Shown: piece by piece, positions 2,630 through 36,138 of the stretch
Position numbering within the stretch: position 1 is the first letter of the stretch
Layout of the letters: each line of letters starts with the position of its first letter
Assembly: GCF_002113885.1 (NCBI RefSeq)
Contig: NW_018406762.1
Location: 1,390,834-1,454,833 of the forward strand
DNA: 64,000 bases
Source: Mizuhopecten yessoensis
Taxonomy: Eukaryota
Reading direction: 5' to 3'
Position numbers and translations under genes: made by a program
Notes under the pieces: generated by a model
Databases searched by the model: none
Told to the model about the DNA's origin: nothing
What the model saw: only the letters and a program-made list of their open reading frames with translations

Positions 2630-2985
2630 TATAAGATAAGAAAAACGATGTTAATTTATGATATGACAACATATCCAAACATCAGAGAGCGATATTTGTT
2701 GACTTTTTAAACATGTTCAACCATCAATAACTATTGCCTGTATATTATGAGATAAGAAAAACGATATAAATTTATGATATTACTACATATCCAAACTTCA
2801 GAAAGCGATCTTTGTTGACTTTTAAACATGTTCAGCCATCAATAACTATTGCCTGTATATTATAACATAAGAAAAACGATATTAATTTATGATATTACAA
2901 CATATCCAAACAAGCAAAACATCACAAAGTGATATTAGTTTTATATTCTTTTTACCTGTTCAACCATCCAATATTATTCCTATAA
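2630..2985. repeat. ~117-bp tandem repeat, 3 copies
   Basis: The unit ataagaaaaacgat..taatttatgatat.acaacatatccaaac...tgttcaaccatcaataactattgcctgta recurs at ~2635, 2752 and 2868. A paralogous region lies at ~31960-32370. Confidence 0.8.
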
Positions 2986-5007
2986 GTCATACCTGTACAT
3001 ATATCTGGTTATTGTTGTATTCGTTAATTTTTAGTCTATTTATGTTAAGTGATGATATTTTTTTTTTTTCAACCTTTAATAAAACCGTCAACATGGAATT
3101 AATGTCCTTGTATATTGTATAATGTATTAGAGTGAGAGTTAAACTATTTGTGAGTGATAGCAATTTATGATATTTTATCATGTTAAAATATTACTATTAA
3201 AATACAATGCCATTTTCGTCTGTCCGCTTGACTGTAATGTCTGTTTTGTGAAAGATCTCATTGATTTAGTACGGCTTTGCTTTATGGTATTAAAGATATC
3301 TACATAAACATGGCCTTTGCCTTGTAATTATATACATAGATTCGATATTTTTTTCAGATATTCTAGTAATTCATGGGAGTCTTAATTACGCAAAATGAAC
3401 ACATCAACAATAAGATTCATTTCTCGTAGAGAGCTTTAGAGCATCGACTTAATTTTAACAATTTTAACTGTTACAAATTACACAGCAAAGACTGGACACA
3501 AGTTATAGTAACCTACAAAATCATCTCCTATGCTAGGCACACTACAGGGTTTGATACCAGTCATTTAGAAATCATAAATAAATTAAAACGCAGTCGAGTT
3601 GACTTTTGTTTTAAAAGTTGATTTGCAAATCAATAAATAAAAAAAAGTTTTTGTAGGAATTATGGATTTATAAAAAAAACCCAAATCATTTATGTCAACG
3701 GTTTCCTTGCAAATATAGCTTCGACACTCAAGGTGTTACGCTCCCTTGAATATGTCATGACAACATCGAAGTCTCCGTACGTGCGACCTTCTGAATGATA
3801 GATACACCAAAATAGTCGTGTGGCACCGTAACGGTAAAATTGACGTCGGGTGCTGCCCCTCTAATCCTCTACGTTTTACTTTTGTTTACATGAGACCAAT
3901 CCAACAGCTACCTTCGTACTTAAGTTTTCACTACGACATATTCCACGGCTGCAGAGATCGTAAGTGAGCGTGACTCCTGGAGTATCTAGGGGGCCTCCCA
4001 AAAGACAACGTATTATGATGTTTCGACCGTTAAACTGGAAAACTTACGCTTTTAATTTCGTTGGCTAGTTATTATTGGTTTGCTTTCCGAGACGATTGAT
4101 AGTTTACATATTACGTCCACATACCAAAGGCGTAAACAATTCTATTACAAATATGGACAAAAAGGCGGGAAATCTAAATACTCATGACTTAATTTCTAGT
4201 TTTTCGTGTAGTTTCTTGTCTGTCAAATTCGTCAGTAAACTAACAAGAATGTTGATCATGAGTTCTTCCCTCATTTGTTTCAGTTCACGGATTTTTCGCT
4301 TATTGAATAACCGCTTTAAATGCATAATCAGTCGCACCGGGCCTGCCACCAGGATACGATCTAGCAGCGGCGAGTGAAAAATGTTTGAATCGCAGTCAAA
4401 TCGTAGAAAGATCGTGCGTTCTATGACACTAAAACGGAACAAAACACAATAACATTTGTTTTGATATTCACTTCAACTAAAAGAATTTGTGATGCACCCC
4501 CCCCCCGTTTCCATCAAATATTGAAGCTGCTTAGGATAGGAGATGGCGCATTGATACACATGTGAGATATTTAGTGGATTTTACAAATATCACGACGTCA
4601 TTCTCGAAAAGAAATATTTATTCAATTAGGAAGCATAATGTTTTGAATAATTTGGACAGGAAAGGAAAATAAGATAAAATACAACAAAAATAATATTAGG
4701 CAAAATTAGCACTGATATACGAACTGAACATTCAGAAAAAAATCTTTATATATAGTGAAGATGAAGCAAGCAGAATTATTTTATAGCTTCGAGTTACTTC
4801 CCTGTCTACGTAGGAATCTCTTATTTTCATAGACTTTTCGTCCCATAAATTGGACTCCAATTTCGGTACTAATTTCTTGGATGGAAGTATTAGCGTAGTG
4901 GAATATTTCATTTACAAGCAAATAGCAGTAACAGTGGTAATAATGGATTCAACTAATTGCTGCCCTCAAATAAATAACAAACAATACAAAGACACAGCAG
5001 TAATACA

Positions 5008-5825
5008 AACAAGAGGTCCAGAGGGTCATCAAATATTATATTGCACTACAAACATTTCCCTCGCAAACTTTGTCGGTTCTATCTGGTGAAACTACCAGCT
5101 AAATGATATTATAAGATTCTATGCATTTTGGTTTTTCTTCAGAAGTAGTTTGACATATTTTCCCCTGTGACCTTGTAAGTAGGTCAATGTCATTCTCCTT
5201 CTCAAACGTTATAAGCTCTATCCCAAAAAAGGCTACCAATCTAACCTTATGAATCCATTCCTTTTGGTTCTTTAGAACAAATTGTTTGAAATGTTGTTGA
5301 CCTCTGTGACCTTTAAAATAGGTTGAGGTCATTTGCATTTGCAATCTTTAGTGAGCTCTATCCCAGGAATCCAAATATGAAGATTCCATACCTTTTAGTT
5401 CTTCAGGAGAAGTGGTTTGAAGCAATTCACATATTGAACCGCTGTGACCTTGAAAGTAGGTCAATGTCATTTTAATAGGGTAACCTTTTAGCACTCCATT
5501 CCTAGGTACCTACTGGCAAAATAGCATGATCCTATGCCTTATAGAACTGTTTAAGAGGAAACATTATAGCACTCCATCCTAAGTATCGACTTGCAACATA
5601 TTATGACCCTGGACCTTATGGGGCTTGAGAGGAATATTGTTAAAGTTTTTAACATATTTGACCCCTGTGACCTTGAAAGTAGGTCAAATATCATAACCCT
5701 ACGTCATCAAGTTCTTCAGAAGAAGTCGCTCAGAGAAAAAGTTGACGGACAGACGGACAACGGACGCAGCAGTACGGCATAAGCTCACATTCGCATGGCC
5801 TTTCGGTCCCTGTGAGCTATTAAAA
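5008..5825 (+). mobile_element. Non-autonomous Helitron/Helentron-like (HINE-type) element with internal TGACCTTGA repeats
   Basis: It starts AACAAGAGG and carries repeated tgaccttgaaagtaggtcaa units and a gacggacagacggac microsatellite. It ends in a stem-loop agctcaca...ggcctttcggtcc..tgtgagct followed by an A-run. This layout is typical of bivalve HINE-like elements; the class is inferred. Confidence 0.6.
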
Positions 5826-6375
5826 TGACTATTTAGAGTTTCATTTTTAATTTTTTTAATTGTGTTTTCTGCATGAATAGAAAATCATAAATAATGTGCA
5901 AATATAATACCATTTAAAAGTATGTAATTGGATGTTTTTATTTTTTGGAAACGAACTTTTTGAGTTACAAAACTTAATGCAGATAATTTCATGCAACACA
6001 CTCTTAAATATTGATAGTGTTTTTCTGTCTGATTCTCTCTCTCTCCCCCTTCTCTTTAACTACCTCTTAATGTGTGCATATGATTAATTACGTGGCGCAA
6101 AAATGTCTTCAAGAAATATTTCATCATTGTACAAATTGTAATAATATATTTGAACTTGATGGTACTGGAAGTTTACCTTAAGATGACATGAAATATTTCA
6201 AAATAAATCCTTGAAAACTAAGTAAATAAATAAAACGAAACCGTCAGTGCAGTTCACTAGTTAATTCGTTGATCAGGCATTGTCGGTTCAAAAACCATAT
6301 GACTTTAAAATGTCATAAACACCATTTGATCAATTGTTCAAATGTCTCTATAAAATGAATCGATATTTGAGAGTG

Positions 6376-6381
6376 TTTATT
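6376..6381 (-). promoter_or_regulatory. Candidate polyadenylation signal (AATAAA) of TRIM-like copy 1
   Basis: tttatt on the plus strand ~90 nt past the stop codon. It is at the same position in intact copies 4 (34425-34430) and 5 (44505-44510). Confidence 0.55.
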
Positions 6382-6469
6382 AGACATTGATGAATTGTTT
6401 GTGATGATATTTACATAATGTAGTATTGTACGACGAGGTCAACTGTTTATCATGTACTCTTTCCTCATG

Positions 6470-8089
6470 TTACAGTCTCATTACGTGTACGGTACCGTCC
6501 TCACACCCGATCCACACGTTCCCGCACGTGTCCACACCCACCGATGTAGGTTTGGTCACTCCACGTTTCTGATCCAGGAGACACGTGGCCTGTGTACTAT
6601 CTCTCGGTAGGACATACACCTGGTTGTTAGTGTAGTCCGGTACAAACAGTCTGTCGTACTTGTCACGTGACATATTACGGATGTCCCTACTACCAACCTG
6701 CTGGCCGTTGTTGAGTTCACCAGACCATTTATATTTTGTTGTACCGGATCTGTCTGTTATGATTGATACATTATCATAGTCCGACACTGCAATGTCTCCT
6801 GACGACAAACATGTTATACACCACGCCTTCATTCCACACGTCACCTTCCTCACAATCGTACCTGTCTGATTCAGTACCACTATGACTGCAGTGTTTGTAT
6901 TAACAAACACCTCGTCCCTCTCGTTGATGCTGATGTCGTATGCTTTATGTGGTCTAATGTCAGCAAATGTTGTCACTTGTTTGTTGTGTAGTGATAGTTT
7001 ATATACAAATGTACTAAATGGATCAATGGTCATAAGTATGGCTTTTGTCCCGACAATGTTGGTTTTGTGCGGACAGAAGTCCAGTTTAACTGTCTCTTTG
7101 GCCACAGCCTCACTGTTGACCAGTACCAGAACCTGGTATTCGTGTATTGATAACCACGCGTGACTATCGTCGACTGGACTTATATCCAATATTTGATTTT
7201 GTTGCGAAACAGTAAACTTAGAGAGACGCTGAACGTGTTTACTGTCGATGTCTGTCTTCTCGTACTGGTCCCCGTGGTGTAATTCACCTAACATTTTCGT
7301 CAACAGGATGCGGTTGATATTTCCGAGAACAAAGCTTGGTTGTTTTGGTGAAACATGTTTCATCTTAACGTCATACAGGGGCAGAGTTTTCCTCAATGAC
7401 ATTTCCGTTTCAAATATGGATACACTAGATGTATCTGTCATTTCCGCCTGTTCAAGCAGACGCGTCAGCTCTTCGACATTTTTCTCCGATCGTTGAATAT
7501 CTTTCTTGTACAGCAGTGATTCCTCTTTTTCCAAAGATGCTAACTCGGCTAGCACTGCTTCCGCGATATAATCTACTTCTGCCTTTAACTTAGTCCTCTG
7601 TGAGTTTACCTCTCTCCTCGTTGTATCAATGTTGTCTTTGAACGTTTTGTTCACGCAATGTCGCTTGGACGTCTCGGTCTTGAAATTTGCTATTTTATCA
7701 GCTAACGTTGTCATATGTTCCTTAAAATGTTCCTTTTTGACAGACAGTTCGTCTTCAAAAGGTTTCCAGTTGTGCTGTTTATGATTTTTAGATAAACATA
7801 TCGAACAAATCAACTCGTTGCAGTCTGAGCAGAACATATCACACAGTTTACCGGGATGTAGTTTACATACCTCTGGCACAGGCTTGTCACCCTGACGGTT
7901 AGCCTTCCCTATCGACACGACGTCATCGTTTTTAGTTTTTCTTCCGCGTGTATGGGTTTCCTTACACCGGTCACATAAATTCTCCTGACAATCGTTACAG
8001 TACCATCTTACCCCGTCTTCACTGTCACACAAAGCACATGTGTAAGTAACGGGTTCTTGGGCACGCCGTACGGATCTGTTACTTGCCAT
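6470..8089 (-). CDS. TRIM-like protein copy 1, intact, 539 aa: B-box1, B-box2, coiled coil, NHL-like beta-propeller, no RING
   Basis: Uninterrupted 1620-nt ORF from an ATG in ACACCATGG context. B-box1 is CxxC..CxxC..LCxxC..H and B-box2 is CxxH..CxxFCxxC..ICxxC..HxxH. A helical E/K-rich segment follows, then NHL-type blades (DISINERDEVFV, LFVPDYTNNQVYV, PTSVGVDTCGNVWIG). The ORF track starts earlier at an alternative codon; the conserved ATG is at 8089. Confidence 0.9.
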   Translation of the reverse strand: MASNRSVRRAQEPVTYTCALCDSEDGVRWYCNDCQENLCDRCKETHTRGRKTKNDDVVSIGKANRQGDKPVPEVCKLHPGKLCDMFCSDCNELICSICLSKNHKQHNWKPFEDELSVKKEHFKEHMTTLADKIANFKTETSKRHCVNKTFKDNIDTTRREVNSQRTKLKAEVDYIAEAVLAELASLEKEESLLYKKDIQRSEKNVEELTRLLEQAEMTDTSSVSIFETEMSLRKTLPLYDVKMKHVSPKQPSFVLGNINRILLTKMLGELHHGDQYEKTDIDSKHVQRLSKFTVSQQNQILDISPVDDSHAWLSIHEYQVLVLVNSEAVAKETVKLDFCPHKTNIVGTKAILMTIDPFSTFVYKLSLHNKQVTTFADIRPHKAYDISINERDEVFVNTNTAVIVVLNQTGTIVRKVTCGMKAWCITCLSSGDIAVSDYDNVSIITDRSGTTKYKWSGELNNGQQVGSRDIRNMSRDKYDRLFVPDYTNNQVYVLPRDSTQATCLLDQKRGVTKPTSVGVDTCGNVWIGCEDGTVHVMRL

Positions 8090-8154
8090 GGTGTTGGTAC
8101 TTAACACACAAACAGTGAAATACTACCATTTGTTTCTGTGTCGGTACAACTATA

Positions 8155-8235
8155 ACTATACACTTCCTTGTTACGGTTATATCACGTGACTTGACCGACA
8201 GACAGTATAATGTCCCGGACTCCTGGCGCTAGGCC
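8155..8235 (-). promoter_or_regulatory. Conserved upstream block (candidate proximal promoter) with E-box TCACGTGAC and ETS-like AGGAAGTG
   Basis: The block gtcccggactcctgg...cacgtga...ccttgtt is retained 70-150 nt upstream of all ATG-bearing copies (~8155, 21395, 36230, 46300, 50360), while the more distal flanks diverge into two types. Confidence 0.4.
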
Positions 8236-9614
8236 AAAATAATCTAACTTAAAGGCAGATCTTGCTATCATACGTTACCATCATTACATGTGTGTATTAG
8301 ACATACATTTAAGTTGTGATTTGTTCTTGAACTGTGTCCCTTCGACCAAACATTTAGACTTTCAAAAGAAAACGACTAGTGTTGAATACATATGATGAAG
8401 AAGCTGTATGAGGCAATAATCTTTTTCGGCAAATTTTATGCATTACTTAATGTTAAAGGTGTATCACGTTTATTTGTGTTACGTTCATCTCATGTATATT
8501 ACATATAACGAGCTGGTCGCCGCCAAACTAGCCCGGTAACAATACAGAAGTGGCACGAAATTCCCGTTAACGTCATTTGACGTCACGAAACAGTTTATGC
8601 ACAGGGGTTCGTCACAAATGTCTAAAATTAACAAATGATTTACTGTTGAATCAAAGCACAGCAAGGCACAACTAATTAATTATCTTAGTTTGATGTGACT
8701 CATAGCAGTGTAGCCAATGTTTATTTCAGACATATGTCACAACCCCTGTACAATGATACAGATGCTTGTTAATTTTAACTTTCTGCCCCACTTTTCACTT
8801 AAGATCCACGATATCACACAGTTGTGATGACTTATGTTCATCTACTAAGTTTCGGAAAGCGTAAATACTACTGCATTATTATTTATACTATATATACCCT
8901 GTTTGTAAAAAAAAATCATCGTCAATGAAAAAACAAAGAACATTTCTAACCCCCTAAAATAAAGAATCGTTACTGTAAAGTTGACACTTGAGTGTTTTGA
9001 ATTGTTTTCAACCCCACTACAACATCTGTTTGTTATACATATGTATATTCGAGTTTTCGTGTAATGACTGTTACTTGTGACTCAATAATATTTGTATATT
9101 TTACTTTTTTAATATACATAATGTCAATGTGAAAATTGTTGATGGGTTTTGTATATTTCGACCCATGATAAATATCACTCGACTTTATAAAGAAAACGTA
9201 CCGCCTCGGGCGGAGAAGCACACTCACAAAACAGTGTGGTAGCTGTGGACGCTTACTCTGTCAGAGATGACAGGGGGCTACACATATGATCCCTTCCTCC
9301 ATGATGTCAGGAGCGGATAGTCAGGATACTTGATGTTTTTCATTATGCTATAAAACGTTATTCATATTACAATAAGTATGAAACAATTAATTGAAACTCA
9401 TATTTTATTATCTTTTTGGACCTGATGTAAGCGCGCAGGGGTCTCAATTTGGGAGGAAACTAGAGTGCTTTATTAAAGAAGAAGAATGTATAATCCACTG
9501 CACCCCCGACCACCCGATGTTTGCATGCTTTAAGGAGTTAGGGCGAACGTCATATACAAACATGATATGCGATCACCATGGTATGCACACCAAGACCTCT
9601 GTTTCAATTTTGAA

Positions 9615-9742
9615 AATAGGAAGGATGTCATAGTCAGTAGATACATAGCCCTAGCTATTAACATTATTGGTACAGGTAAATAGGAAGGATGTAATAGTCA
9701 GTAGTTACATAGCCCTACCTATTGATGTTATTGGTTCAGGTA
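9615..9742. repeat. Two units of the 64-bp minisatellite
   Basis: aaataggaaggatgt.atagtcagtag..acatagcccta.ctatt..gttattggt.caggt x2; same unit as the array at 38425-40107. Confidence 0.85.
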
Positions 9743-10033
9743 CCGTCGCGACAATCGATCCACACGTGTCCACACCCACTCTTTCAGGGGTAACCGATCC
9801 GTTTCTCTGGTAAAGAACATACACGTGATTGTTCCTCAGGTCTCGCACACAGACTCTGTCGTACTTGTCAGATGATATTTTATGGCTACTCCTACTACGA
9901 ACCTTTTGGCGATTGTTGAGTCCACCAATTGATTTATATTTAGTTATACTTGAACTGTGAACTATGATTGATATATTATAGCATGCCGACATTGCAACCT
10001 CTCCTGACGATAAACATGCAGCAAAATACACAT
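9741..10033 (-). pseudogene. Degenerate TRIM-like propeller relic (paralog of 787-1072)
   Basis: ORF 9705..10100 contains ACLSSGEVAMS, KYKSIGGLNNRQKVRSRSSHKISSDKYDRVCV and VTPERVGVDTCG, which clearly derive from the TRIM C-terminus. Confidence 0.85.
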
Positions 10034-12447
10034 TTGTTTTAAACGAAAAGTTCGAATAGGTACCATTTATTTGTATTGTAAAAGTAAAATGCCACATCAA
10101 ACAAAATAAAAGTACTCCATTTTAGGTTTCCTCACACAACTTAAACAAATGTAACTTTTACAAACAGGTATGCCATCACGTTTGATCGAGTATTCGGTTA
10201 TTTGGTGTATTTTGTAATCAAACAATAAACAACGACAATACGTTATATGTTTAACAAGTGTTTTATTTAAAACGTATTTACACCACATACATAATTTATA
10301 TCAATAAAATAGCATGATAGTTTAATCGCGTTTTTAAACTAAACCAAGGAAATAATTACATGTAACCTCAGGTAGTTTATTTAATGGGCAAGACATATCG
10401 GAATACAGTAAGCCGGGATTTAATTACAGTTATCTGTACACGAAATCATACGTGGCAATAATACTATTTAGAACAAAATTTTATCGACAAACGTTTCAAT
10501 ACATGCTTGCTCATTCAAGTGTGACCTCGTCATACACCTAGCATGTAAAAGTGCGTTCAAAATGTACCTTTAATAGTTTATATTTCACAACTGTGTATTC
10601 TGGCTTCCTTTAAAAAAAATCGGTATTACTATGGTGCTGTAGGGATATCTTTGTCAATCTGTACAATAGAGTACAAAAACAGCTCTAGCATGTCACCGTG
10701 AACACTGTTCTTATGACAAAACTATCCTTTTTGGTCGCAGCTATGGATAATTTGTAGGTCTAAAACAGGGAAGCATAGAGCTCCCCAAAGGGTTAAATAA
10801 ATATCCGACTATTTAGTTAACCGGATAACAGTTGACAACCTAAACTAAAAACAACGTCGTTTTCGTCCATATGTCGGCATCACGTCTGTCCGCTTGTCTG
10901 TAATGTCTGCTTTTGACAGATCGCCTTGATATGTGATTTAGTACGACCCTGCTTGATGGCATTTAAAATCTCTACATAAAGTCGGATATATAAGTATTTC
11001 ATGGGTGTCTTAATTACGCAAAACATATGTGATGAACAAAACAGCATCTTATTCATTTCTCATCAAGAATTTAGAGCACCAAATTGATTGTAAATCTGAT
11101 TTGACTTTTTAAAAACACATTTTATTGTTAATGAGTATACATCAAAGACTGGACATAAGTTATTGTAACCTACAAAACTTCCCTCTTATAACAGTAACAC
11201 AACAGTGTTTGATACCAGTCATTCCCCTCTTATTTCAGTTACAGAACCGGGTTTGTTACCAGTCATTTATTCTCCTCTTATTCCAGTTACACAACCGGGT
11301 TTGATACCAGTCATTTAAGAATTAATTACAACGCAGTCGAATAAAAGGTTGGAAAATTGAATGGCTGGAGTTATTTGTTGTCGTTACATTTTCGTCCCCT
11401 TTAAATCTAAATATAATTACACAACACGAAGTGGTAGTACACCATGCCAGGGTTGTTGGTATGCGTAAAAATGATTAAGCATAAAGGAAGTCAAAAAGAT
11501 ATATATTTACCTTTCTATCGAAATGTTATTTTCAGTTGATTTTCAAATAATTTTATAAAAAGTTCACTTTGTTGGATTTGGATTTTTGACAACAAGTCAT
11601 TTATGTGAACGGTTTCCTCCCTAACAATATGGCATTGATATTCCAGGGGGTTCGTTCACTGAAATATGTCATGACAAAATTAAAGTCTCTGCTATTTTCT
11701 AAATGATACAAGTACGCTAGTCAATCAAACAGCTACATTTGTGCCTTATATTTCACCATGATATTTCCATGGTTGATAAACGGTATAAACAGTTATGATC
11801 CCAAAGAACCTTCCACTAAGTTTGTTTGACTTGAAGTAATATCCGTTATATATAGAAGATGGACCAAGCAGATGGATTTTGTAGCCCAGAGTTACTTCCC
11901 CTGTCTACCTTTGAACCGTTTAGTGCTCTCTTCATTTTCATAGACTTTGTGGCCCTTAAATTGGATTCTAACTTCGGAGCTATTCTTTAGACGAAAGTAT
12001 TGGCGTAGGCTTGGCAGTATAATAGTCATGAGTTCGAATTCTGCAGTACTTCTGTTCCCCCTTTTCATTCCGATTTTCAAAACACTCAATTTTCACACAA
12101 CTATAGTTCTGTAAAATGCATCATCACATATATTTTTAATAAATACTTCTTTAAAAATAAATATTCACAACATTATCAGCGGAAATAATGGAATTTAACT
12201 CATTGGTACCCTTTCTTTTTAATGAATTGCAAAGAAAACAAAGACCTAATACCTATACAAATACTTTATTTAGAGCTTCACAGTTTAGTTAGTTTTATAC
12301 ATGAACAGAGAATAAGAAAAGTATATACAAATCTAAATCCATTGAACACCTTGTATTTAGATGTTTGTATTGTTTGGAAACGAACTTTTCGAGTAAAAAA
12401 ACCGTAATGAAGATGTTTTATATAGCACGTTCTTAAATATTGACAAA

Positions 12448-12448
12448 G

Positions 12449-12481
<33 letters not shown>

Positions 12482-12482
12482 G
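12448..12482. repeat. (TCTG)n microsatellite
   Basis: About 8 TCTG units; shorter at the paralogous site ~44120-44141. Confidence 0.85.
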
Positions 12483-12958
12483 ATTCTTTTCTCTCTAACT
12501 ATCTCTTCATATATGCCTATAATTAATTACGTGTCGCAAAAATGTTTTAAACAAACATTTCATCATTATGACAATCATAATAAGATATTTTAACATTATG
12601 GTACTCGATCTTTACCTTAAGATGACATGAAATATTTCAAAATAAATCTTTATTAACTGAGTAAATAAAAACAATACCTAATCCCACATATAGATAAAAC
12701 AAAACCCTCAGCGCAGCTCACTATCATTGATTGATCAGTTCCATGCTCAGGCATTGTCGGTTCAAAATCCTTATATAACTTTAAAATGTTTTTCAAATAT
12801 GTCATTTACACCAATTGATCAATTGTTCGAATTATTCTAAAATATGAATCGATATTTGAGGGTATTTTTCAGACATTGATGAATTGTTTGTGATGATATT
12901 TACATAATGCAGTATTGTACCACGAGGTCAAATGTTCACCATGTACTATATCCTCATG

Positions 12959-13972
12959 TTACAGTCGGATCACGTGTACGGTACCGTCCACACATCCGAT
13001 CCACACTTTCCCACATGTGTCCACACCCACCGATGTAGGTTTGGTCACTCCACGTTTCTGATCCAGGAGACACGAGGCCTGTGTACTATCTCTCGGTAGG
13101 ACATACATCTGACTGTTAGTGACATTTGGTACAAACAGTCTGTCGTACTTGTCACGTGGCATCGTACATATGTCCCTACTACCAACTTTTTGACCGTTGT
13201 TGAGTTCACCAGTCCATTTATATTTGGTTGTACCAGAACTGTCTGGTACGATTGATACATTATTTAAGTCCGACACTGCAATGTCTCCTGACGACAAACA
13301 TGTAATACACCGCCCATCCATTCCACACGGTACCTTCCTCACAATCGTACCTGCATGATTCAGTACCACTATGTCTGGTGTGTTTGTACTAACTAACACC
13401 TCATCCTTCTCGTTGATACTGATGTCGTATGCTCTATGTGGTCTGATGTCAGCAAATGTTGTCACTTGTTTGTTAGGTAGTGATAGTTTATATACAAATG
13501 TATTTACTGGGTTACTGGTCATAAGTATGTCTGTTGTCTCGACCATGGTGATTCTGTGCGGACAAAAGTCAAGTTTTACTGCCTCTTTGACCACACCCTC
13601 CCTGTTGATCAGTACCAGACCCTGGTATTCGTGTATTGATAACCACGCGTGACTGTCGTCGACTTGACTTATATCCAATATTTGATTTTGTTGCGAAACA
13701 GTAAACTTAGAGAGACGCTGAACGTGTTTACTGTCGATGTCTGTCTTCTCGTACTGGTCCCCGTGGTGTAATTCACCTAACATTTTCGTCAACAGGATGC
13801 GGTTGATATTTCCGAGAACAAAGCTTGGTTGTTTTGGTGAGACATGTTTCACCTTAACGTCATACAGAGGCAGAGTTGTCCTCAATAATATTTCCGTTTC
13901 AAATATGGATACACTAGATGTATCTGTCAGTTCCGCCTTTTTAAGCAGACGCGTCAGCTCTTCGACATTTTT
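12959..13972 (-). pseudogene. TRIM-like copy 2, 5'-truncated (end of coiled coil plus propeller only)
   Basis: Open frame homologous to copy 1 from KNVEELTRLL to the stop. Homology ends abruptly at 13972, with no B-boxes and no ATG at the junction. The AATAAA site is mutated (12861-12870 ggtatttttc). Confidence 0.85.
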
Positions 13973-14028
13973 GTTCAATCACCTTGAAAAAGGAGTTTAT
14001 GATATTTCCAAATGTGTAGCATACTTAC

Positions 14029-14510
14029 GGAAGCAGTTGATTGTGACCACCGTCCTGCTTGTCTTGATCATTCTTGTAAAAGGGAGTAGGTGTCATTCAC
14101 AGTCATAGCACTCTCTTTATTTTCAAATTGAAAATTTCATTCCCGAAGGTAAATGTGACACCTTACCTTTGTGTGGTAACCTCAATGTCCAAACTCATTT
14201 GAGCCCCGGACACCAGTTCCATTAATCTGTCATCATAGTCCAATTCTCTTCCATCTACTCGTAGAACAATGGCCCCATCACCAGGCGAACCAAAATTGTA
14301 TTGCCTAACGAACACCACCAACACCTAGTTTCATCAAAAGTAAACAACTCAGAAAGGAAGTTTAATCAAATAACTACGATGCAACGGATTTTACACTGGT
14401 CCTTTGATAAAAACTCACTCCCAAATTAGAACAGTAATGTTGAAGATGAGTTGATGGACTATAGCTCTTTCATCACCAGCAATGCCATTTTTGATCATTT
14501 ACACTTCATT
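14029..14510 (-). pseudogene. Decayed spliced gene fragment (3 putative exons, ubiquitin-like appearance)
   Basis: Minus-strand GT-AG bounded segments: ~14510-14419 (donor gtgagt), 14324-14167 (ctag| ... |gtaagg; 52 open codons VLVVFVRQYNFGSPGDGAIVLRVDGRELDYDDRLMELVSGAQMSLDIEV) and 14072-14029 (donor gtaagt). Both introns are 94 nt. Upstream stops and a 1-nt phase mismatch suggest decay. Confidence 0.4.
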
Positions 14511-16460
14511 TCTAGCTTAGATCCCTCTCATTGCAGATGAGACAGCCAAGGTCAACACTGTTACTGTACTGCTGGTACTCCGAGAACAAAATTCAAAAGC
14601 ATTCTTAGCTTGCGAATAAGTTTGTCTTACATTTATGAGTTTTAAATACGATTTTGAAATTCAACTTCTTATAAAAACATATAAAAGATTAGTTGGATTT
14701 GCGAGTGGTGATAAATAACAACCATTTATTACCGTTATGAAAATTCGTAAATTGCTTGATGCTTTCAGATCTATACAGTGAGTCCACGTTATGTTGAAGG
14801 TGGATGTTCGGTGTAAGTTATACTTAGTATAAGGGATACGGAACTATAAGATAACCTTGGCTATTTTCCGAATTGTTAAAATCATGAACCATCCCTATTT
14901 GTGAGGCGTCGACCTTATATATACGCGAATACATAACTATACTTTAATTACACCGACATAATGATTGCTTGTCTCTGTAACAAATATGTGGAAATTGGCA
15001 ACTCTGTAAGACACAACTTTTGTTTTGGTTACTCGAATTTTTAGGAGGAGGAGAGAATGGATTACTATTCGTTGTGATTGATCCGGTGAAACAACCGAAG
15101 ACTGTAATATAGAACATATCTGTCAGTGGCGAAATGATATCAGAGATGTATGGTTTGGGTGTTTGACCGGGGTAATTGTCTGATAAATTTCTGGTGGCTA
15201 ATAAAAGTTCTGCCCCGAAATTGTATCGAAGATACACGATTTCTATATTTATAATATGGAGGTGATATTTATATGATATAATATATTTACTTAATAACCT
15301 GATTTATCACACACCTGTTGAATATAACGAAAGGGATAAAGGCGATTGTCAGCCCATGAAATACAAGATCTTGTACTGAATACTCTTCAATACAGATGTT
15401 GCACTACCCTAGCAGTCGAGGTTTTTTTAGTTTTTTTTATAGGTAATACTAATTTTAATTTTCCATGACCTGGGTTTCAACAATCGTACAAGTATAGTGT
15501 CCTAGCACAATAGGATTCTCATTCAATGTACATTTACTCCATTCTATCGTGCATACATACACTCACACATGTATTCACATTTTTACACGCACACATACAT
15601 GCATAAATGTATATTCACATGAATACATGTATATCAATGTATTCCTACAATTTCTACATCGTTCTAACATTTTACATCGATACGTAGAGGTACATACAAA
15701 TGCTACTTACATTCCTTTCGTCCTTGATCTTTTTCTTCTTTTCAACTTTAAACAGTCACTCGTACATACATTCTTCTCTACTTATTTCCGTAAGCATAGA
15801 TACTTGAATATAAATGCATGAAGCTATTCATTTCCTCCTTTTAATCCTTTTCTTACTGACTATAGTTTTCTTACTCAACTTCTTCATAAATCATTTAGTC
15901 ATTATAATTAAATATAGTTTTTTTTTATAGATAACAAGGACAAGGTCAGTTTATTAGTTAGTTATCACACATTAATAGCCTGATCAATTGTATTCATCTT
16001 TTTACTGTATAAAACTAAGACGAACTGTAAACACATTATTATATACCACGGACATACGTCGAATTACTATAATGTAATACATAAAAAATTCACACGTACC
16101 AAACATTAATACAGTATGATATGGATAAAGTGTACGCTTCCGGTTGTTACAAACTCAATTATACATCCAATGTTTTTATCCCGGTTCAGTAGAACGCATG
16201 GTTTTTGTAAGTAAAAAATCATAATTCTTGTAAAAGTGTTCGATGTGTTGATATAAACAGCTTCTTTTTATCTTCCGGTGTTGTCTTAATGTTCCAAGTT
16301 TTGATTATCTGACAAGCAACAACACAGGTAAAGTGAGCGTCAGCCTCTCAATTCGGAGTCCCATATTACAAAAAGTTGTCAACCCCCCAACCCCCCTCCT
16401 TTCCTGCACTTATACCCTAAAATATGTTTATGGAAATGGTTCTATTTTATTGCTTTCATG

Positions 16461-17006
16461 TAAAAGGGGCTGGTCGGGGAAAAAGATACAAAATAAAATA
16501 AATGGGTCTAAATGCGTTCTCTGGCCTTCCAAATGTTATACCACGGCAATATGATGGTCGATATCTGCTTGCAATGTCCAGTTGTTGGCAGTGACGATAA
16601 CAACAATAACACGTCGTCTATCAGCCATGTCGGACTCAACTAGCGGACAAGACAGCAATACTATACGTAAATATTTGTTTTCAAAAGTCATGTATGATGC
16701 AAGTGTAGTATTCCTACCTATATGCCTGTCATGACTTTTGCATGTATCTTTTTCTATCGCCGCGATGTTTACATTTGGCCTTGTTGATGACGCGCATGCG
16801 GTAAAATTATATCACTGATCATGGTCAATTGAGAGTTTTAGACTGTCAGGTAACGATTTAGGATTTCTTTAATACAATTATAATTTTTACTCTTAGGGAG
16901 TGAATTTCAGCAAAATTTGAATCGGTATATTTCATAAGAAGGTATTTTAAACATGTGTATGCCATTTTAGCAAATATGACATTTTTCCCCCGACCAACCC
17001 CTTTAA
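16461..17006. mobile_element. Non-autonomous TIR DNA transposon (Kolobok-like MITE)
   Basis: Terminal inverted repeats taaaaggggctggtcggggaaaaa and tttttcccccgaccaacccctttaa. The (T)TAA-type ends with AGGG termini resemble Kolobok elements. Confidence 0.6.
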
Positions 17007-18064
17007 GTCAAACAAGTAAAGAGGTGTTTATTCGGTCAATTTTGTAATCAAACAATAAACAACGACAATACGTTATATGTTTAGCAAGCACCCCATTTAA
17101 AACGTATATCAATTAGCATGATAGCTTACTGGCGTATTTAAGCTTAACCCAGGAAATAGTTAAATGTAACCTCAGTAAGTATATTTAATGGGCAAGACAT
17201 GTCGGAATACAGTAAGGCGGGATTCAATTACAGTTATCAGTACTCGAAATCATATGTGATAGTATCGTTCTTTATAACAAAGTTTGATCGACTAACGTTT
17301 TATTACATGCTTGCTCAATCAATAGTGTACTCTTCATATCATCTTTATATCTCGCATGTAAACGCTTTGTATTCTGGCTTCCTTTTAAAATCGGTCCTGT
17401 TTTTCTATGGCGCTGGCGTTTTCTCTTTGTCAATCTTTACAATAGAGTACAAAAACAACACTAACATGTCAGTCTGAACACCTTTTTTTATTACAAAACT
17501 ATCCAATTTTGGTAGCAGCTAAAGATATTTTGTTGGCGTAAGCCGGAGAAACATGAGGCTCCCTAAAGGGGTAAATAAATGCCCGAACATTCTGCTATTG
17601 AAAATGTTACCAAGTTCGTGGTCTACCGACAAAGTAACCGTTTTATCAGCTAAGCATCGACAACACTAACTAAAATGCAATGTCATTTTCTTCCATTATG
17701 TCCATCAAGTCAGTCCGCTTGTCTGTAATGTCTGTTTTGTGAAAGATCTCATTTATTTGTTATTTAGTACGGCTTTGTTTGATGGTATTAAAGATATCTA
17801 CATGAACATGGCCTTCGCCTTGTAATTATATACACAGATTCGTTATTTTTTTCATGGGAGTCTTAATTACACAAGAACTATTTTTATGAATACATCAATA
17901 ATAAGATTCATTTCGCTTGGAAAGCATCGACTTGATTTTAACAAATTTAACTGTTACAAATTATACAACAAAGGCTGGACACAAGTTAAAGTAACCTCAA
18001 AATCTCTTCTCCTATTCTTCATTTATATGTAGAAAGGATAGAACACCATTTAAGTCAAAAAATG

Positions 18065-18097
<33 letters not shown>

Positions 18098-19690: not shown

Positions 19691-21312
19691 TTACAGTCTC
19701 ATCACGTGTACGGTACCGTTCAAACACCCGATCCACACGTTCCCACACTTGTCCACACCCACTGCTGTAGGACTGACCACTCCATGTTTCTCGTCCAGGA
19801 GACACGTGGCCTGTGTACTATCTCTCGGTAGGACATACACCTGATCGTTTTTGTAGTCTAGCACTAACAGTCTGTTGTACTTGTCACGTGATATATTATG
19901 GAGTGACCTACTACCGACATTATGACCATTGTTGAGTTCACCAGTCCATTTATATTTGGTTGTACCAGATCTGTCTGTTATGATTGATACATTTGTATAG
20001 TCCGACACTGCAATGTCTCCTGACGACAAACATGTAATAAACCGCCCATTCATTCCACACGTCACCTTCCTCACAATCGTACCTGACTGATTCAGTACCA
20101 CTATGTCTGGTGTGTTTGTACTAACAAACACCTCGTCCCTCTCGTTGATACTGATGTCATGTGGTTCATGTGGCTTGATGTCAGCAAATGTTGTCACTTG
20201 TGTGTTGTGTAGTGATAGTTTATATACAAATGTACTATCATCAGAACAGCTCATAAGTATGTCTGTTGTCCCGACCATGGCTATTCTGTACAGACAAAAG
20301 TCCAGTTTTACTGTCTCTATGACCACACCCTCCCTGTTGATCAGTACCAGACCATGGTATTGGTCTATTGATAACCACGCGTGACTGTCGTCGACTGGAC
20401 ATATACTCCGTATTTCATTTCGTTGAGTAACAGTAATCTTCGAGAGACGTTGAACGTGTTTACTGTCGATGTCTGTCTTTTCGTACTGGTTCCCGTGGTG
20501 TAATTCACCTAACATTTTCGTCAACAGGACGCGGTTAATACTTCCGGTAACAAAGCTTGGTTGTTTTGGTGAAACATGTTTCATACTATATATTCATACA
20601 GGGGCAGAGTTTTCCTCAATGACATTTCCGTTTCAAATATGGATACACTAGATGTATCTGTCAGTTCCGCCTTTTCAAGCAGACGCGTCAGCTCTTCGAC
20701 ATTTTTCTCCGATCGTTGAATATCTTTCTTGTACAGCAGTGATTCTTCTTTTTCTAAAGATGCTAACTCGGCCAGGACTGCTTCCGCGACATAATCTACT
20801 TCTGCCTTTAACTTAGTCCTCTGTGAGTTTACCTCTTTCCTCGTTGTATCAATGTTGTCTTTGAATGTTTTGTTCACGCGATGTCGCTCTGACGTGTCGT
20901 TCTTGAAATGTGCTATTTTATCAGTTATCGTTGTCATATGTTCCTTAAAATGTCCCTTTTTGACAGACAGTTCGTCTTCAAAAAGTTTCCAGTTGTGCTG
21001 ATCATGACGTTTAGAAAAACATGTCGAAGAAATCAACTCGTTGCAGTCCGAGCAGAAAAAATCACACAGTTTACCGGGATGGCGTTTACATACCTCTGGC
21101 ACAGGTAAGTGGTCCTGACGGTTAGCCTCCCCGATCGACACGACGTCATCGTTTTTAGTTTTCCTTCCGCGTGTATGGGTTTCCTTACACCGGTCACATA
21201 AATTCTCCTGACAATCGTTACAATACCATCTTACCCCGTCTTCACTGTCACACAAATCACACGTGTAGGTGACAGGTTCCTGTGCACGCCGTACGGATCT
21301 GTTACTTGCCAT
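19691..21312 (-). pseudogene. TRIM-like copy 3, full length with a +2 frameshift at the coiled-coil/propeller hinge
   Basis: The span is 1622 nt versus 1620. The 7-nt cttaacg is replaced by the 9-nt actatatat at ~20585-20593, giving ORFs 20581..21312 (243 aa) and 19691..20584 (297 aa). A B-box2 Cys is also lost (ELISSTC versus ELICSTC). Confidence 0.85.
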
Positions 21313-22603
21313 GGTGTTGGCCCCTTCACAGAACACGACAACACTTAACACCCAAACTGTGAAATGCCACCATTTTGTTGTTAGCTTTAACTGTACACTC
21401 CCTTGTTCCGGGTATATCAATGTGATGAAACCGACCGACACGTATGAGGTCCCGGACTCCTGGCGTTAGGCCAAAAACATAGATAAGTGTGTGCATTATA
21501 AACATACGTTACATTATACAGTAGATAATGTAATGAAGTTAACTTTTTACCTGTAGCTATCGTTTACCGTGTTTAATAACAGACAGTTAATGGCCTAGAA
21601 GAAAAAGAAGAAAAAAATACATTGCACAAAGCTACATTGACACAACTGTCAAAAATCTATAAGGGGAGGCAGACAAGTGACATTGACCTTATAATTAAAC
21701 GTTCAAGGTACTAATCACAGTCAGTGTTACTTGAAGTATTACATAACAATAGGTTAAGAGATCTCAGGGTTCGAAATTGACATCTGCGTGGTATTTCATA
21801 AAATGATAAAATAATAATAATAATTCGAGGTTCTTATGTACCGCTCTATCACGACCTAGGTCGTAGGCCGTTTAAAGACGGTTCACAAATTTTGATTTTT
21901 TGTTATGATATTCATCTCTTGATGGAATAAATAGTAACTTTCAAATCTTAACTTCTGTCAAGTATGTCAATTAATGAAGAAAATACGTGACATTCATCGC
22001 TCTTGTACAGTTTTAAAATGTCAACATCTGACACATTTGTGTCGAACATGGAAGAGTATGTCGTTGATAAATTTTAAAGCATATCATAATATTTTCCAAA
22101 AGAAGAACATCTTAATTTTTTGTTGAAAATTTTAGTCGTGTACATGAAGAAAACCAGAAATATCTCAAATTGACTGATTTATGACGGATTTTGCATTCCA
22201 GAGCCCCCGGCNCCCCCCACCCTCCTCTTGAGGCCTCAATATATTCCTGTGTCGGTTCCAATGCAACTGTATCAAACAAAAACACATGAAAAAGGAGAGT
22301 TATTATTCATGACACAGCGTTAAGTTCTCGTACTGAGTCAAAACCACAATGCAGATCTGTCACACGAGTTATTTCCCGTAAGACAGTCACCAAGTGATCA
22401 TAAACTACTGCAATGTCGTTGGCAAAACAGAAGAAATATAAAGGTGATATTATGTATCAAATAATAGGATTAAAGATAAAAATATACCGTCTGAAATGTC
22501 TCGGTGAAGAGAATGAAAAAAGGTCAATTGAAAAAACCAATTGAGATATCAAGCTTACTTATAATGCCTTTCAGAGCAAAGCAATAACAAGTATAAAATT
22601 ATT

Positions 22604-34518: not shown

Positions 34519-36138
34519 TTACAGTCTCATCACGTGTACGGTACCGTCTATACAACCAACCCACACGTTCCCACACGTATCCACACCCACCGCTGTAGGT
34601 TCGATCACTCCATGTTTCTTGTCCAGCAGACACATGGCCTGTGTACTATCTCTATGTAGGACATACACCTGATCGTTGAAGGAGTCTGGTACAAACAGTC
34701 TGTCGTACTTGTCACGTGACATCTTAAAGAGGTTCCTACTACCAACCTGTTGACCGTTGTTGATTTCACCAGACCATTTATATTTTGTTGTACCAGATCT
34801 GTCTGTTACGACTGATACATTACTAAAGTCCGACACTGCAATGTCTCCTGATGAAAAACATGTAATAAACCACCCACGTATTCCACACGTCACCTTCCTC
34901 ACAATCGTACCTGACTGATTCAGTACCACTATGTCTGGTGTACCTGTACTAACAAACACCTCCTGCCTCTCGTTGATGATGATGTCACATGCTTCATGTG
35001 GTCTGATGTCAGCAAATGTTGTCACTTGTTGGTTGTGTAGTGATAGTTTATGTACATATGAATTGTCATTATGACTGGTCATAAGTATGTCTGTTGTCCC
35101 GACCATGGTGATTTTGTACGGACAGAAGTCCAGTTTAACTGTCTCTTTGACCACACCCTCGCTATTGATCAGTACCAGACCCTGGTATTGATATATTAAT
35201 AACCACGCGTGACTGTCGTCGACTGGACATATATCCAATATTTGATTTCGTTGAGTAACAGTAGACGTAGAGAGACGTTGAACGTGTTTACTGTCGATGT
35301 CTGTCTTTTCGTACTGGTTCTCGTGGTGTAATTCACCTAACATTTTCGTCAACAGGACGCGGTCGATACTTCCGGTAACAAAGCTTGGTTGTTTTGGTGA
35401 AACATGTTTCATCTTAACGTCATACAGGGGAAGAGTATTCCTTAATGACACTTCCGTTTCAAATATGGATACACTAGATGTATCCGTCAATTCTGCCTTT
35501 TCAAGCAGACGCGTCAGCTCTTCGACATTTTTCTCCGATCGTTGAATATCTTTCTTGTACAGCAGTGATTCCTCTTTTTCCAAAGATGCTAACTCGGCCA
35601 GCACTGTTTCCGCGATACAATCTACTTCTGCCTTTAACTTAGTCCTCTGTGAGTTTACCTCTTTCCTCGTTGTATCAATGTTGTCTTTGAACGTTTTGTT
35701 CACGCGATGTCGCTCTGATGTCTCGTTCTTGAAATTTGCTATTTTATCAGCTAACGTTGTCATATGTTCCTTTAAATGTTCCTTTTTGACAGACAGTTCG
35801 TCTTCAAAAAGTTTCCAGTTGTGTTGTTTATGATTTTTAGATAAACATATCGAACAAATCAACTCGTTGCAGTCCGAGCAGAACATATCACACAGTTTAC
35901 CGGGATGTAGTTTACATACCTCTCGTAGAGGCTTGTCGCCCTGACGGGTAGCCTTCCCTATCGACACGACGTCATCGTTTTTTGTTTTCCTTCCTCGTGT
36001 ATGGGTTTCCTTACACCGGTCACATAAACTCTCCTGACAATCGTTACAGTACCATCTTACCCCATCTTCACTGTCACACAGAGCACACGTGTAGGTAACG
36101 GGTTCCTGAGCACGCCGTACGGACCTGTTACTTGCCAT
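34519..36138 (-). CDS. TRIM-like protein copy 4, intact, 539 aa
   Basis: 1620-nt ORF collinear with copy 1 without indels; B-box ligands intact; AATAAA and E-box retained. Confidence 0.9.
   Translation of the reverse strand: MASNRSVRRAQEPVTYTCALCDSEDGVRWYCNDCQESLCDRCKETHTRGRKTKNDDVVSIGKATRQGDKPLREVCKLHPGKLCDMFCSDCNELICSICLSKNHKQHNWKLFEDELSVKKEHLKEHMTTLADKIANFKNETSERHRVNKTFKDNIDTTRKEVNSQRTKLKAEVDCIAETVLAELASLEKEESLLYKKDIQRSEKNVEELTRLLEKAELTDTSSVSIFETEVSLRNTLPLYDVKMKHVSPKQPSFVTGSIDRVLLTKMLGELHHENQYEKTDIDSKHVQRLSTSTVTQRNQILDICPVDDSHAWLLIYQYQGLVLINSEGVVKETVKLDFCPYKITMVGTTDILMTSHNDNSYVHKLSLHNQQVTTFADIRPHEACDIIINERQEVFVSTGTPDIVVLNQSGTIVRKVTCGIRGWFITCFSSGDIAVSDFSNVSVVTDRSGTTKYKWSGEINNGQQVGSRNLFKMSRDKYDRLFVPDSFNDQVYVLHRDSTQAMCLLDKKHGVIEPTAVGVDTCGNVWVGCIDGTVHVMRL

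What the first reader, a model, noticed from the sequence alone, without database searches (positions are those of the whole stretch)
6470..13972. Gene-conversion tracts between neighbouring copies contradict the duplication history
Seen: the flanks show that the block [copy 1, spacer, copy 2] is duplicated as [copy 4, spacer, copy 5], since 8100-12958 matches 36150-44598. Copy 1 should therefore resemble copy 4, and copy 2 copy 5. Instead, copies 1 and 2 are identical over ~175 nt (~7177-7351 versus ~13666-13840) and nearly identical at ~6528-6618 versus ~13017-13107 (LLDQKRGVTKPTSVGVD). Copies 4 and 5 share their own private motifs (HGVIEPT, FVPDS, EINNGQ, HENQYEK, IDRVLL). Inference: post-duplication gene conversion between adjacent paralogs shuffles propeller segments, and truncated copy 2 may serve as a sequence donor or recipient.
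Basis: partly seen in the sequence, partly recalled or inferred. Interest (0 to 1): 0.75.

Follow-up and report, generated by a model that had tools for sequence, protein, structure and literature searches.

The report
Gene conversion between neighbouring scallop paralogs
Two neighbouring copies of a scallop B-box/NHL-propeller gene, one intact and one truncated, share two short stretches copied from one to the other; this is real but is an ordinary case of gene conversion in a tandem gene family.

Summary
The window is Mizuhopecten yessoensis DNA. It holds a minus-strand tandem array of intronless, RING-less B-box/coiled-coil/NHL-propeller genes.

The core observation holds. Copy 1 and truncated copy 2 are identical over exactly 7177-7351 versus 13666-13840 (175 nt, permutation P about 2e-5). 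They differ at one base over 6528-6618 versus 13017-13107 (P 2e-4 to 9e-4). The 513 nt between the tracts differ by about 14%.

- **Flanks.** The distal 3' flanks group (1,4) and (2,5) and reject (1,2) at p-AU 2e-93.
- **Tract 1.** It groups copies 1 and 2 with 99/98 support and rejects both flank pairings.
- **Shared states.** Fourteen states shared by copies 1 and 2 are derived. Six occur in none of the 26 other copies polarised against, which rules out mere conservation.
- **Third block.** A copy of the block 70 kb upstream shows that most of both tracts predates that duplication. At least one short patch is younger.

Not supported: conversion between copies 4 and 5 (P 0.25). Most of their "private motifs" are ancestral states. 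Outside the two tracts the coding tree is a star, not (1,2)(4,5). The direction of transfer is unresolved.

The assembly looks short-read based, so collapse is not fully excluded, though one contig from an independent run carries copy 1's own mosaic. This is a known process in a new example.

The parts
6470..8089 (-). Copy 1 (c1): intact 539-aa gene with two B-boxes, a coiled coil and a six-bladed NHL-type propeller, no RING
   Evidence: ORF. Pfam finds zf-B_box and ANCHR-like B-box only. AlphaFold model: helix 111-239 and an all-beta domain 288-539 with pLDDT above 90. Best fold hits are the TRIM2/TRIM3 NHL domains, target TM 0.76.
7177..7351 (-). Tract 1 in copy 1: 175 nt identical to copy 2. 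It extends to 7132 with two mismatches (7176, 7166). Encodes aa 247-305, or 247-320 extended.
   Evidence: P about 2e-5. The tract tree groups c1, c1', c2 and c2' at 99/98 and rejects (c1,c4) at p 0.0015 and (c2,c5) at p 0.006.
13666..13840 (-). Tract 1 in copy 2, the partner of 7177-7351
   Evidence: Constant offset of 6489 nt between the two copies.
6528..6618 (-). Tract 2 in copy 1: 91 nt with one mismatch (6586) to copy 2. Encodes aa 491-521, in blade 6.
   Evidence: P 9e-4; 2e-4 allowing one mismatch. The derived states at 6572, 6564, 6555 and 6544 are absent or rare in the 26 other copies.
13017..13107 (-). Tract 2 in copy 2
   Evidence: Offset of 6489 nt.
12959..13980 (-). Copy 2 (c2): 5'-truncated copy. 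It lacks the B-boxes and most of the coiled coil, but 339 codons remain open up to the normal stop.
   Evidence: Homology to the family ends at 13980. No 5' half of the gene lies between 13980 and 19690. The sequence upstream has an 85-90% relative on another contig with no gene copy of at least 300 nt beside it.
8108..12958 (.). Spacer between copies 1 and 2. It is collinear with 36139-44598, the spacer between copies 4 and 5.
   Evidence: Identity is 72-92% near copy 1's 5' side and 92-99% over 10800-12600.
5685..6469 (-). 3' flank of copy 1 (type alpha). It pairs with the 3' flank of copy 4 (33710-34518) and also with p3 and p4 outside the window.
   Evidence: region R8.
10770..12958 (-). 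3' flank of copy 2 (type beta). It pairs with the 3' flank of copy 5 (42329-44598). Identity falls from about 96% to 83-89% at about 12600.
   Evidence: The (c2,c2',c5) clade has 98/95 support.
34519..36138 (-). Copy 4: intact, 539 aa
44599..46218 (-). Copy 5: intact. Its 3' flank is of the copy-2 type and its 5' flank of the copy-3/copy-6 type.
19691..21441 (-). Copy 3: full length but split into two reading frames by a 2-nt insertion near 20585
7202..7229 (-). Patch where copy 1 equals copy 2 but the 98%-identical outside copy c1' keeps the family-majority states
6544..6564 (-). Patch with 6 differences in 21 nt between copy 1 and c1'. Copy 1 equals copy 2 here, while c1' is closest to copy p6.
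   Evidence: Clustering test P about 9e-4.
10706..15205 (.). 4.5 kb with zero mismatches to the duplicate block 70 kb upstream; the rest of that 17-kb duplicate differs at roughly 1.5% of sites. It contains copy 2.
   Evidence: Orphan contigs 100% identical to 13897-14495 and 14992-15216 exist.

Best explanation
Copy 1 (intact) and copy 2 (5'-truncated) lie 6.5 kb apart in direct orientation. They have exchanged two short stretches of coding DNA by non-allelic (interlocus) gene conversion, in which a break in one copy is repaired using the neighbour as template. The tracts are about 175-220 nt and 91 nt.

**Shown**
- The tracts exist and are non-random.
- They carry derived states otherwise unique to these copies.
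- Their genealogy conflicts with that of the flanks.
- Events fall at two or more times. Most of both tracts predates the 17-kb duplication that produced a second copy of the block 70 kb upstream. Short patches at 7202-7229 and 6544-6564 arose after it.

**Inferred**
- The repair mechanism itself.
- That the gene cassette (about 8239 to 6250: 5' leader, coding sequence and about 220 nt of 3' flank) is the only part similar enough across copies to recombine.
- That this limit is why coding sequence lacks the deep two-type split seen in the distal flanks.

The direction of transfer is unknown.
For: - **Identity.** Exact identity over 7177-7351 and one mismatch over 6528-6618, with permutation P about 2e-5 and 2e-4 to 9e-4. 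The c1-c2 tract is still significant after Bonferroni correction across 54 pairs of 11 array copies.
- **Not a conserved region.** Other copies differ from copy 1 by a median of 6-12 per 90 nt in the same windows.
- **Derived states.** 14 of the 25 sites with pattern 12|45 are derived in copies 1 and 2 and cluster in the two tracts. The states at 7327, 7326, 7270, 7180, 6555 and 6544 occur in 0 of the 26 other copies polarised against. Three of the 14 are synonymous.
- **Tree conflict.** The tract-1 tree groups c1, c1', c2 and c2' at 99/98. It rejects (c1,c4) at p 0.0015 and (c2,c5) at p 0.006. The distal flank rejects (c1,c2) at p 2.5e-93 and supports (c2,c5) at 98/95.
- **Quartet sites.** Pattern 14|25 occurs at 3 of 1008 coding sites versus 45 of 357 distal-flank sites, Fisher P 6e-24.
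- **Separately assembled copy.** c1' shares 9 of the 14 derived states but differs at 7436, 7229, 6564, 6555 and 6544.
- **Independent DNA.** A contig from run X18 (different study, 2025) matches copy 1 exactly over 7137-7253. That stretch combines copy-1-specific bases (7176, 7166) with the copy-2-like bases (7229, 7205, 7202).
- **No alternative version.** No orphan contig holds a different version of this stretch.
Against: - The genome has 82,659 contigs and, from my memory of the genome paper, which I could not retrieve, is a short-read assembly.
- A 4.5-kb stretch of zero mismatch between the two blocks, together with identical orphan contigs, suggests that some sequence was collapsed or reused. 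Copy c2' is therefore not an independent witness of copy 2.
- All read evidence came as short de Bruijn contigs that break at the tract edges. No single molecule spanning a whole tract with both flanks was seen.
- A test for spatial structure of site incompatibility across the array was only marginal (P 0.06-0.11). Tract-like exchange is shown for a few pairs, not array-wide.
Confidence: 0.8

Rival explanations
1. Assembly artefact. The identical tracts, or the mosaic of copy 1, were produced by a short-read assembler (bubble merging, gap filling with reads from the neighbouring paralog) and do not exist in the animal.
For: - The assembly is highly fragmented.
- There is a 4.5-kb zero-mismatch stretch between blocks that otherwise differ at roughly 1.5% of sites.
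- Orphan contigs are 100% identical to parts of it, one of them at its right edge.
- Exact identity, as opposed to near identity, could come from consensus merging.
Against: - The separately assembled copy c1' carries 9 of the 14 shared derived states without being identical to copy 2.
- An independent 2025 DNA run yields a contig with copy 1's unique combination of bases across the right edge of tract 1.
- Independent runs cover 26 of the 30 depth bins of the laid stretch around copy 1 at 99% or better likeness.
- No leftover contig carries an alternative tract.
Confidence: 0.08
2. Unequal crossing-over rather than conversion. Misaligned recombination within or next to the genes reassorted flanks and coding parts, so that flanks and genes have different histories without any short non-reciprocal patches.
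For: - The array clearly rearranges. There is a 17-kb duplicate 70 kb away.
- Copy 5 combines a copy-2-type 3' flank with a copy-3-type 5' flank.
- The switch from flank-type signal to star-like signal is sharp near 6250-6450.
Against: - Both tracts are internal and short. They are bounded on both sides by about 14% divergence between the same two copies.
- A single crossover cannot give this pattern, and a double crossover over 91-220 nt is conversion in all but name.
- Crossing-over may still explain the broader decoupling of flanks and coding sequence.
Confidence: 0.09
3. No exchange at all. The shared stretches reflect local constraint or convergent selection on the same residues in copies 1 and 2.
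For: - 11 of the 14 shared derived sites change the amino acid.
- The family shows high homoplasy, with about 49% of informative site pairs incompatible.
Against: - Identity is complete at every position of 175 nt, including all silent positions. Outside the tracts the same two copies differ at 0.14 of 4-fold sites.
- Three shared derived changes are synonymous.
- Other copies vary freely in the same windows.
- The shared states are contiguous rather than scattered.
Confidence: 0.03

Closest known systems
Interlocus (non-allelic) gene conversion in tandem multigene families, e.g. human gamma-globin genes and CYP21A2/CYP21A1P (from general knowledge, not tested here)
   Same: Short tracts of tens to hundreds of nt copied between directly repeated paralogs a few kb apart. 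Tract genealogy conflicts with flank genealogy. A defective copy takes part, as with CYP21A1P.
   Different: The direction of transfer is not established here. The family is a mollusc-specific expansion of unknown function. Homogenisation is weak: copies stay about 12% apart, so this is not classical concerted evolution.
TRIM-NHL proteins (TRIM2, TRIM3, TRIM32/Thin, TRIM71)
   Same: B-box, coiled coil and a six-bladed NHL propeller in the same order. The propeller superposes on the TRIM2/TRIM3 NHL domains at target TM 0.76.
   Different: No RING domain. Two B-boxes start almost at the N-terminus. Pfam's NHL models do not score. The genes are intronless and form large tandem arrays confined to scallops among the hits.
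Fish finTRIM and other lineage-specific TRIM expansions (PMC3137616; only its abstract in the search list was seen)
   Same: A lineage-specific multigene TRIM-like family whose C-terminal binding domain varies most.
   Different: The variable domain there is B30.2/SPRY, and a RING is present. Nothing about conversion in those families was checked here.
Pseudogene-templated diversification (chicken immunoglobulin V pseudogenes; from general knowledge)
   Same: A truncated, probably non-functional copy shares patches with an intact neighbour.
   Different: That system is somatic, programmed and one-directional. Here the events are germline and rare, and their direction is unknown.

Membership tests
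Interlocus gene conversion event | A stretch of significantly raised identity between two paralogs, bounded on both sides by ordinary divergence | tested here: met
   0 of 175 and 1 of 91 mismatches, against 71 of 513 between the tracts. P about 2e-5 and 2e-4 to 9e-4. Significant after Bonferroni correction.
Interlocus gene conversion event | The genealogy of the tract conflicts with the genealogy of flanking DNA | tested here: met
   AU tests and quartet sites (Fisher P 6e-24).
Interlocus gene conversion event | The shared states are derived and include silent sites, so they are neither retained ancestry nor convergence | tested here: met
   14 derived sites, six of them found in none of the 26 other copies, and 3 synonymous.
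Interlocus gene conversion event | Non-reciprocal transfer with an identifiable donor and recipient | tested here: inconclusive
   One search finds one site favouring each direction. The comparison with c1' fits either copy 2 into copy 1, or a p6-like donor into c1'. Copy c2' is not independent of copy 2.
Interlocus gene conversion event | Both copies with their tracts exist on single DNA molecules, so the tracts are not an assembly artefact | tested here: inconclusive
   only short contigs were available. One independent contig spans the right edge of tract 1 with copy 1's own bases. No long reads were available.
Classical concerted evolution of a tandem array | Array members are kept nearly identical to one another | tested here: not met
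   all pairs differ by 0.11-0.145 at 4-fold sites and by about 12% overall. The propeller core gives a star tree.
TRIM (tripartite motif) family | N-terminal RING finger | tested here: not met
   One search finds no RING family. The protein starts 17 residues before the first B-box cysteine.
TRIM (tripartite motif) family | B-box zinc finger(s) followed by a coiled coil | tested here: met
   PF00643, PF22586; continuous helix 111-239.
NHL-repeat beta-propeller | Six-bladed propeller of the NHL type | tested here: met
   about 24 strands over residues 288-539, pLDDT above 90. TRIM2, TRIM3, Thin and PknD/Pizza6 are top hits at target TM 0.72-0.81. The Pfam NHL model itself does not score.

The most novel reading that the evidence does not exclude
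Truncated, non-coding copies such as copy 2 are kept in the array because they serve as a germline store of propeller and linker segments. These segments are pasted into intact neighbours, giving a templated, patchwise way of diversifying a scallop intracellular recognition family. It would be an invertebrate germline counterpart of pseudogene-templated diversification.
Probability: 0.08. Interest if true: 0.65.

Novelty: new member of a known kind. Interest (0 to 1): 0.3.

Why it matters
Trees of this large scallop gene family cannot be read as duplication histories. Short patches move between copies, and coding sequence is decoupled from the flanks. Tests for positive selection on the propeller need to allow for recombination. 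The locus is a clean, datable example of conversion involving a truncated copy in a mollusc, and long reads or population data could quantify it. It does not reveal a new mechanism.

Tried and rejected
1. **Conversion between copies 4 and 5.** Permutation P 0.25-0.33. No (4,5) clade appears in any region and it is rejected in two. Most of the 'private' motifs are ancestral.
2. **Array-wide recombination signal.** In a PHI-like four-gamete test, incompatibility is about 49% everywhere and only marginally lower for nearby sites (P 0.06-0.11). I do not claim pervasive tract-structured exchange.
3. **'Coding sequence is older than the flanks'.** Nei-Gojobori dS for copies 1 and 4 (0.15-0.18) looked about three times the flank divergence. 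At strict 4-fold non-CpG sites it is 0.058 versus 0.055 for the flank. That excess came from CpG sites and the method and is dropped for copies 1 and 4. Copies 2 and 5 keep a roughly two-fold excess.
4. **Direction of transfer.** I looked for tract sites shared with the flank-sister copies. The result was one site each way.
5. **Biased conversion.** Counting by hand from the states, the shared derived changes split about evenly between AT-to-GC and GC-to-AT. This is uninformative.
6. **Haplotype explanation for the upstream duplicate block.** Its neighbours p3-p6 are not allelic to copies 3-6 (about 10% apart), so this was rejected.
7. **Assembly method.** The genome paper is not held. The short-read statement rests on my memory.
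8. **Literature.** Searches for conversion or TRIM-NHL expansions in bivalves found nothing specific.
9. **Retrocopy idea for the 2-kb gene cassette.** The flanks remain alignable beyond it at 74-82%, and I saw no poly(A) remnant in the alignment. Rejected.
Full report
**What the window is.** The best protein matches are annotated Mizuhopecten yessoensis (Yesso scallop) proteins. More distant relatives come only from other scallops. The window is G000:C3435:1390834-1454833, from a 988-Mb assembly in 82,659 contigs. It is AT-rich (about 35% GC), sparse in ORFs and rich in satellites.

All family members lie on the minus strand:
- copy 1, 6470-8089, intact, 539 aa;
- copy 2, 12959-13980, 5'-truncated, with 339 codons still open;
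- copy 3, 19691-21441, frameshifted;
- copy 4, 34519-36138, intact;
- copy 5, 44599-46218, intact;
- a 5' fragment, 49822-50300.

Pfam finds two B-boxes and nothing else. An AlphaFold model built from a 30-sequence alignment gives the B-boxes, one long helix (residues 111-239), a disordered linker (243-285) and a confident all-beta domain (288-539). That domain superposes on the NHL propellers of TRIM2, TRIM3 and Drosophila Thin at target TM 0.71-0.77.

**The observation.** Copies 1 and 2 are identical over exactly 7177-7351 versus 13666-13840, with the first mismatches at 7352 and 7176. Over 6528-6618 versus 13017-13107 they differ only at 6586. Across the 513 nt between the tracts they differ at 71 positions, about 14%.

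I permuted the order of polymorphic sites in the manner of GENECONV, using nine array copies.
- Tract 1 is a run of 56 concordant polymorphic sites (P about 2e-5).
- With tract 1 removed, tract 2 is a run of 32 sites (P 9e-4), or 44 sites allowing one mismatch (P 2e-4).
- With eleven copies and Bonferroni correction over 54 pairs, c1-c2 remains significant at 0.011.

The region is not simply conserved. Other copies differ from copy 1 by a median of 6-12 per 90 nt in these windows.

**Flanks versus coding sequence.** Among copies 1, 2, 4 and 5 the quartet-informative sites switch sharply at the end of the gene.

| Region | Aligned columns | Pattern 14|25 | Pattern 12|45 | Pattern 15|24 |
|---|---|---|---|---|
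| Shared coding part | 1008 | 3 | 25 | 5 |
| Distal 3' flank | 357 | 45 | 0 | 1 |

The Fisher test for the 14|25 pattern gives P 6e-24.

ML trees with AU tests agree.
- The distal flank supports (c2,c2',c5) at 98/95. It rejects (c1,c2) at p 2.5e-93 and (c4,c5) at p 3e-64.
- The tract-1 region groups c1, c1', c2 and c2' at 99/98. It rejects (c1,c4) at p 0.0015 and (c2,c5) at p 0.006.

The alpha-type flank is, however, also shared with two further copies outside the window.

The 12|45 signal is not a property of the whole coding region. Fifteen of the 25 sites lie inside the two tracts. The 513-nt propeller core has 8, 3 and 5 sites for the three patterns and gives an unresolved star tree. At 4-fold degenerate sites outside the tracts, all six pairs differ by 0.11-0.145.

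I polarised the 25 sites against 26 other family members.
- Fourteen are derived in copies 1 and 2.
- Only five are derived in copies 4 and 5.
- Six are ambiguous.

HGVIEPT, HENQYEK and IDRVLL are simply the family's common states. The genuinely derived 4/5 states at 6715, 6631 and 6629 are also carried by a third copy (pB). The 4-5 permutation test gives P 0.25-0.33. Conversion between copies 4 and 5 is therefore not supported.

**Evidence from outside the window.** The array continues upstream. A 17-kb duplicate of 2206-18979 lies about 70 kb to the left and contains c1' (98% identical to copy 1) and c2'.

c1' shares nine of the fourteen derived 1/2 states (7327, 7326, 7315, 7309, 7270, 7207, 7180, 7069, 6572). 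At 7436, 7229, 6564, 6555 and 6544 it has the family-majority state. The same holds at 7205. Most of both tracts therefore predates that duplication.

The differences between copy 1 and c1' cluster, with six inside 21 nt (P about 9e-4). This marks at least one younger patch event. Either copy 2 was copied into copy 1, or a p6-like donor was copied into c1'. I could not decide between these.

Further significant tracts link copy 1 with p3 (6673-6574) and copy 4 with pB (6679-6631). Exchange is therefore not limited to immediate neighbours, although p3 is the next gene after c2' in the duplicate block.

**Selection and rates.**
- dN/dS is 0.17-0.51 in the B-box/coiled-coil half and 0.44-0.99 in the linker and propeller part.
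- An apparent three-fold excess of synonymous over flank divergence for copies 1 and 4 disappears at strict 4-fold non-CpG sites (0.058 versus 0.055).
- Copies 2 and 5 keep a roughly two-fold excess. This fits copy 2 having received foreign tracts.
- Cross-type pairs are only about half as diverged at 4-fold sites (0.10-0.12) as in the distal flank (0.19-0.21).

Together with the near absence of 14|25 sites in coding sequence, this shows that the roughly 2-kb gene cassette has a history decoupled from its spacers. Whether past conversions or crossovers did this is an inference.

**Artefact check.** Several features argue for caution.
- Within the 17-kb duplicate, 10706-15205 has zero mismatches, while the rest differs at roughly 1.5% of sites.
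- Orphan contigs are 100% identical to 13897-14495 and 14992-15216.
- This could be a very recent long conversion or reuse of one contig by the assembler. Either way, c2' is not an independent witness of copy 2.
- I recall the assembly as short-read based but could not retrieve the paper.

Other evidence argues against an artefact at the copy 1 - copy 2 tracts.
- c1' was assembled separately and shares the derived states without being identical to copy 2.
- No leftover contig carries an alternative version.
- Contigs from three DNA runs and one probable RNA run were laid at 99% likeness. The two DNA runs from other studies cover 26 of the 30 depth bins of the laid stretch 6000-8400.
- One 2025 contig matches 7137-7253 exactly. 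It joins copy-1-specific bases (7176, 7166) to the copy-2-like bases (7229, 7205, 7202).

The contigs are short and break at the tract edges, so no molecule spanning a whole tract was seen.

**Verdict.** The copy 1 - copy 2 tracts are real, non-random and best explained by interlocus gene conversion involving a truncated copy. The copy 4 - copy 5 part of the claim fails. The 'coding tree' is a star outside the tracts. This is a well-known process in a new family and organism.

Earlier notes of this scan on adjoining and similar arrays in this genome (s1-519437, s1-508007, s1-507935) describe the same gene family. One of them says that copies 'swap sequence'. I confirmed the domain architecture myself but did not test their site-level selection claims.

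Noticed in passing
window 10706-15205 versus G000:C3435 about 70 kb upstream: A 4.5-kb stretch of perfect identity sits inside a 17-kb segmental duplicate that otherwise differs at roughly 1.5% of sites. Orphan contigs C65049 (599 nt) and C17657 (225 nt) are 100% identical to 13897-14495 and 14992-15216. This is either a very recent long conversion or assembler reuse of one contig.
   Followed up: partly
window 9855-10018 (also seen in three other spacers outside the window): A relic of about 165 nt of the gene (matches copy 1 coding positions 1295-1458 at about 78%) sits inside the spacer. It is an old decayed gene fragment carried along with the repeat unit.
   Followed up: no
window 44599-47452 compared with 19461-22571 and 12247-13980: Copy 5 has the 3' flank of copy 2 but the 5' flank of copies 3 and 6. 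The unit itself looks like a recombinant between two flank types.
   Followed up: partly
window 14149-16380 and G000:C76473 (L043): The sequence that replaces the 5' half of copy 2 has an 85-90% relative on another contig, with no gene copy of at least 300 nt in the 20 kb fetched there. The truncation therefore came from a rearrangement joining foreign low-copy DNA to the middle of the gene.
   Followed up: partly
window 38326-40215, 42652-43266, 53118-about 55000, 62688-about 63900: Satellite arrays with periods of 64, 44, 20 and 18 nt. The first two are expansions inside the copy 4-5 spacer that are absent from the copy 1-2 spacer. The 18-nt array produces spurious long ORFs at 62828-63865.
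   Followed up: no
window 24906-25526 (minus strand): A 206-aa ORF with a weak endonuclease/exonuclease/phosphatase match (E 9e-4). It is probably a LINE endonuclease remnant inserted upstream of copy 3.
   Followed up: no
window 19691-21441: Copy 3 is full length, but a 2-nt insertion near 20585 splits it into two reading frames. It is a pseudogene or a sequencing error.
   Followed up: partly
window 54910-62426 versus the 10 kb just beyond the window's right end: A second young tandem duplication (94-98% identity, offset about 9.1 kb), unrelated to the gene family.
   Followed up: no
window 6000-6470: Contigs from a run guessed to be RNA (X7) cover the 3' flank of copy 1 down to 6000 and parts of the coding region. 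This hints at expression with a 3' UTR of at least 470 nt. The run type is only a guess.
   Followed up: no
window 6647 and 6890: Contigs from other individuals carry the c1' base at single positions in an otherwise copy-1 context. Some copy 1 / c1' differences may therefore be polymorphic, or reflect further exchange.
   Followed up: no
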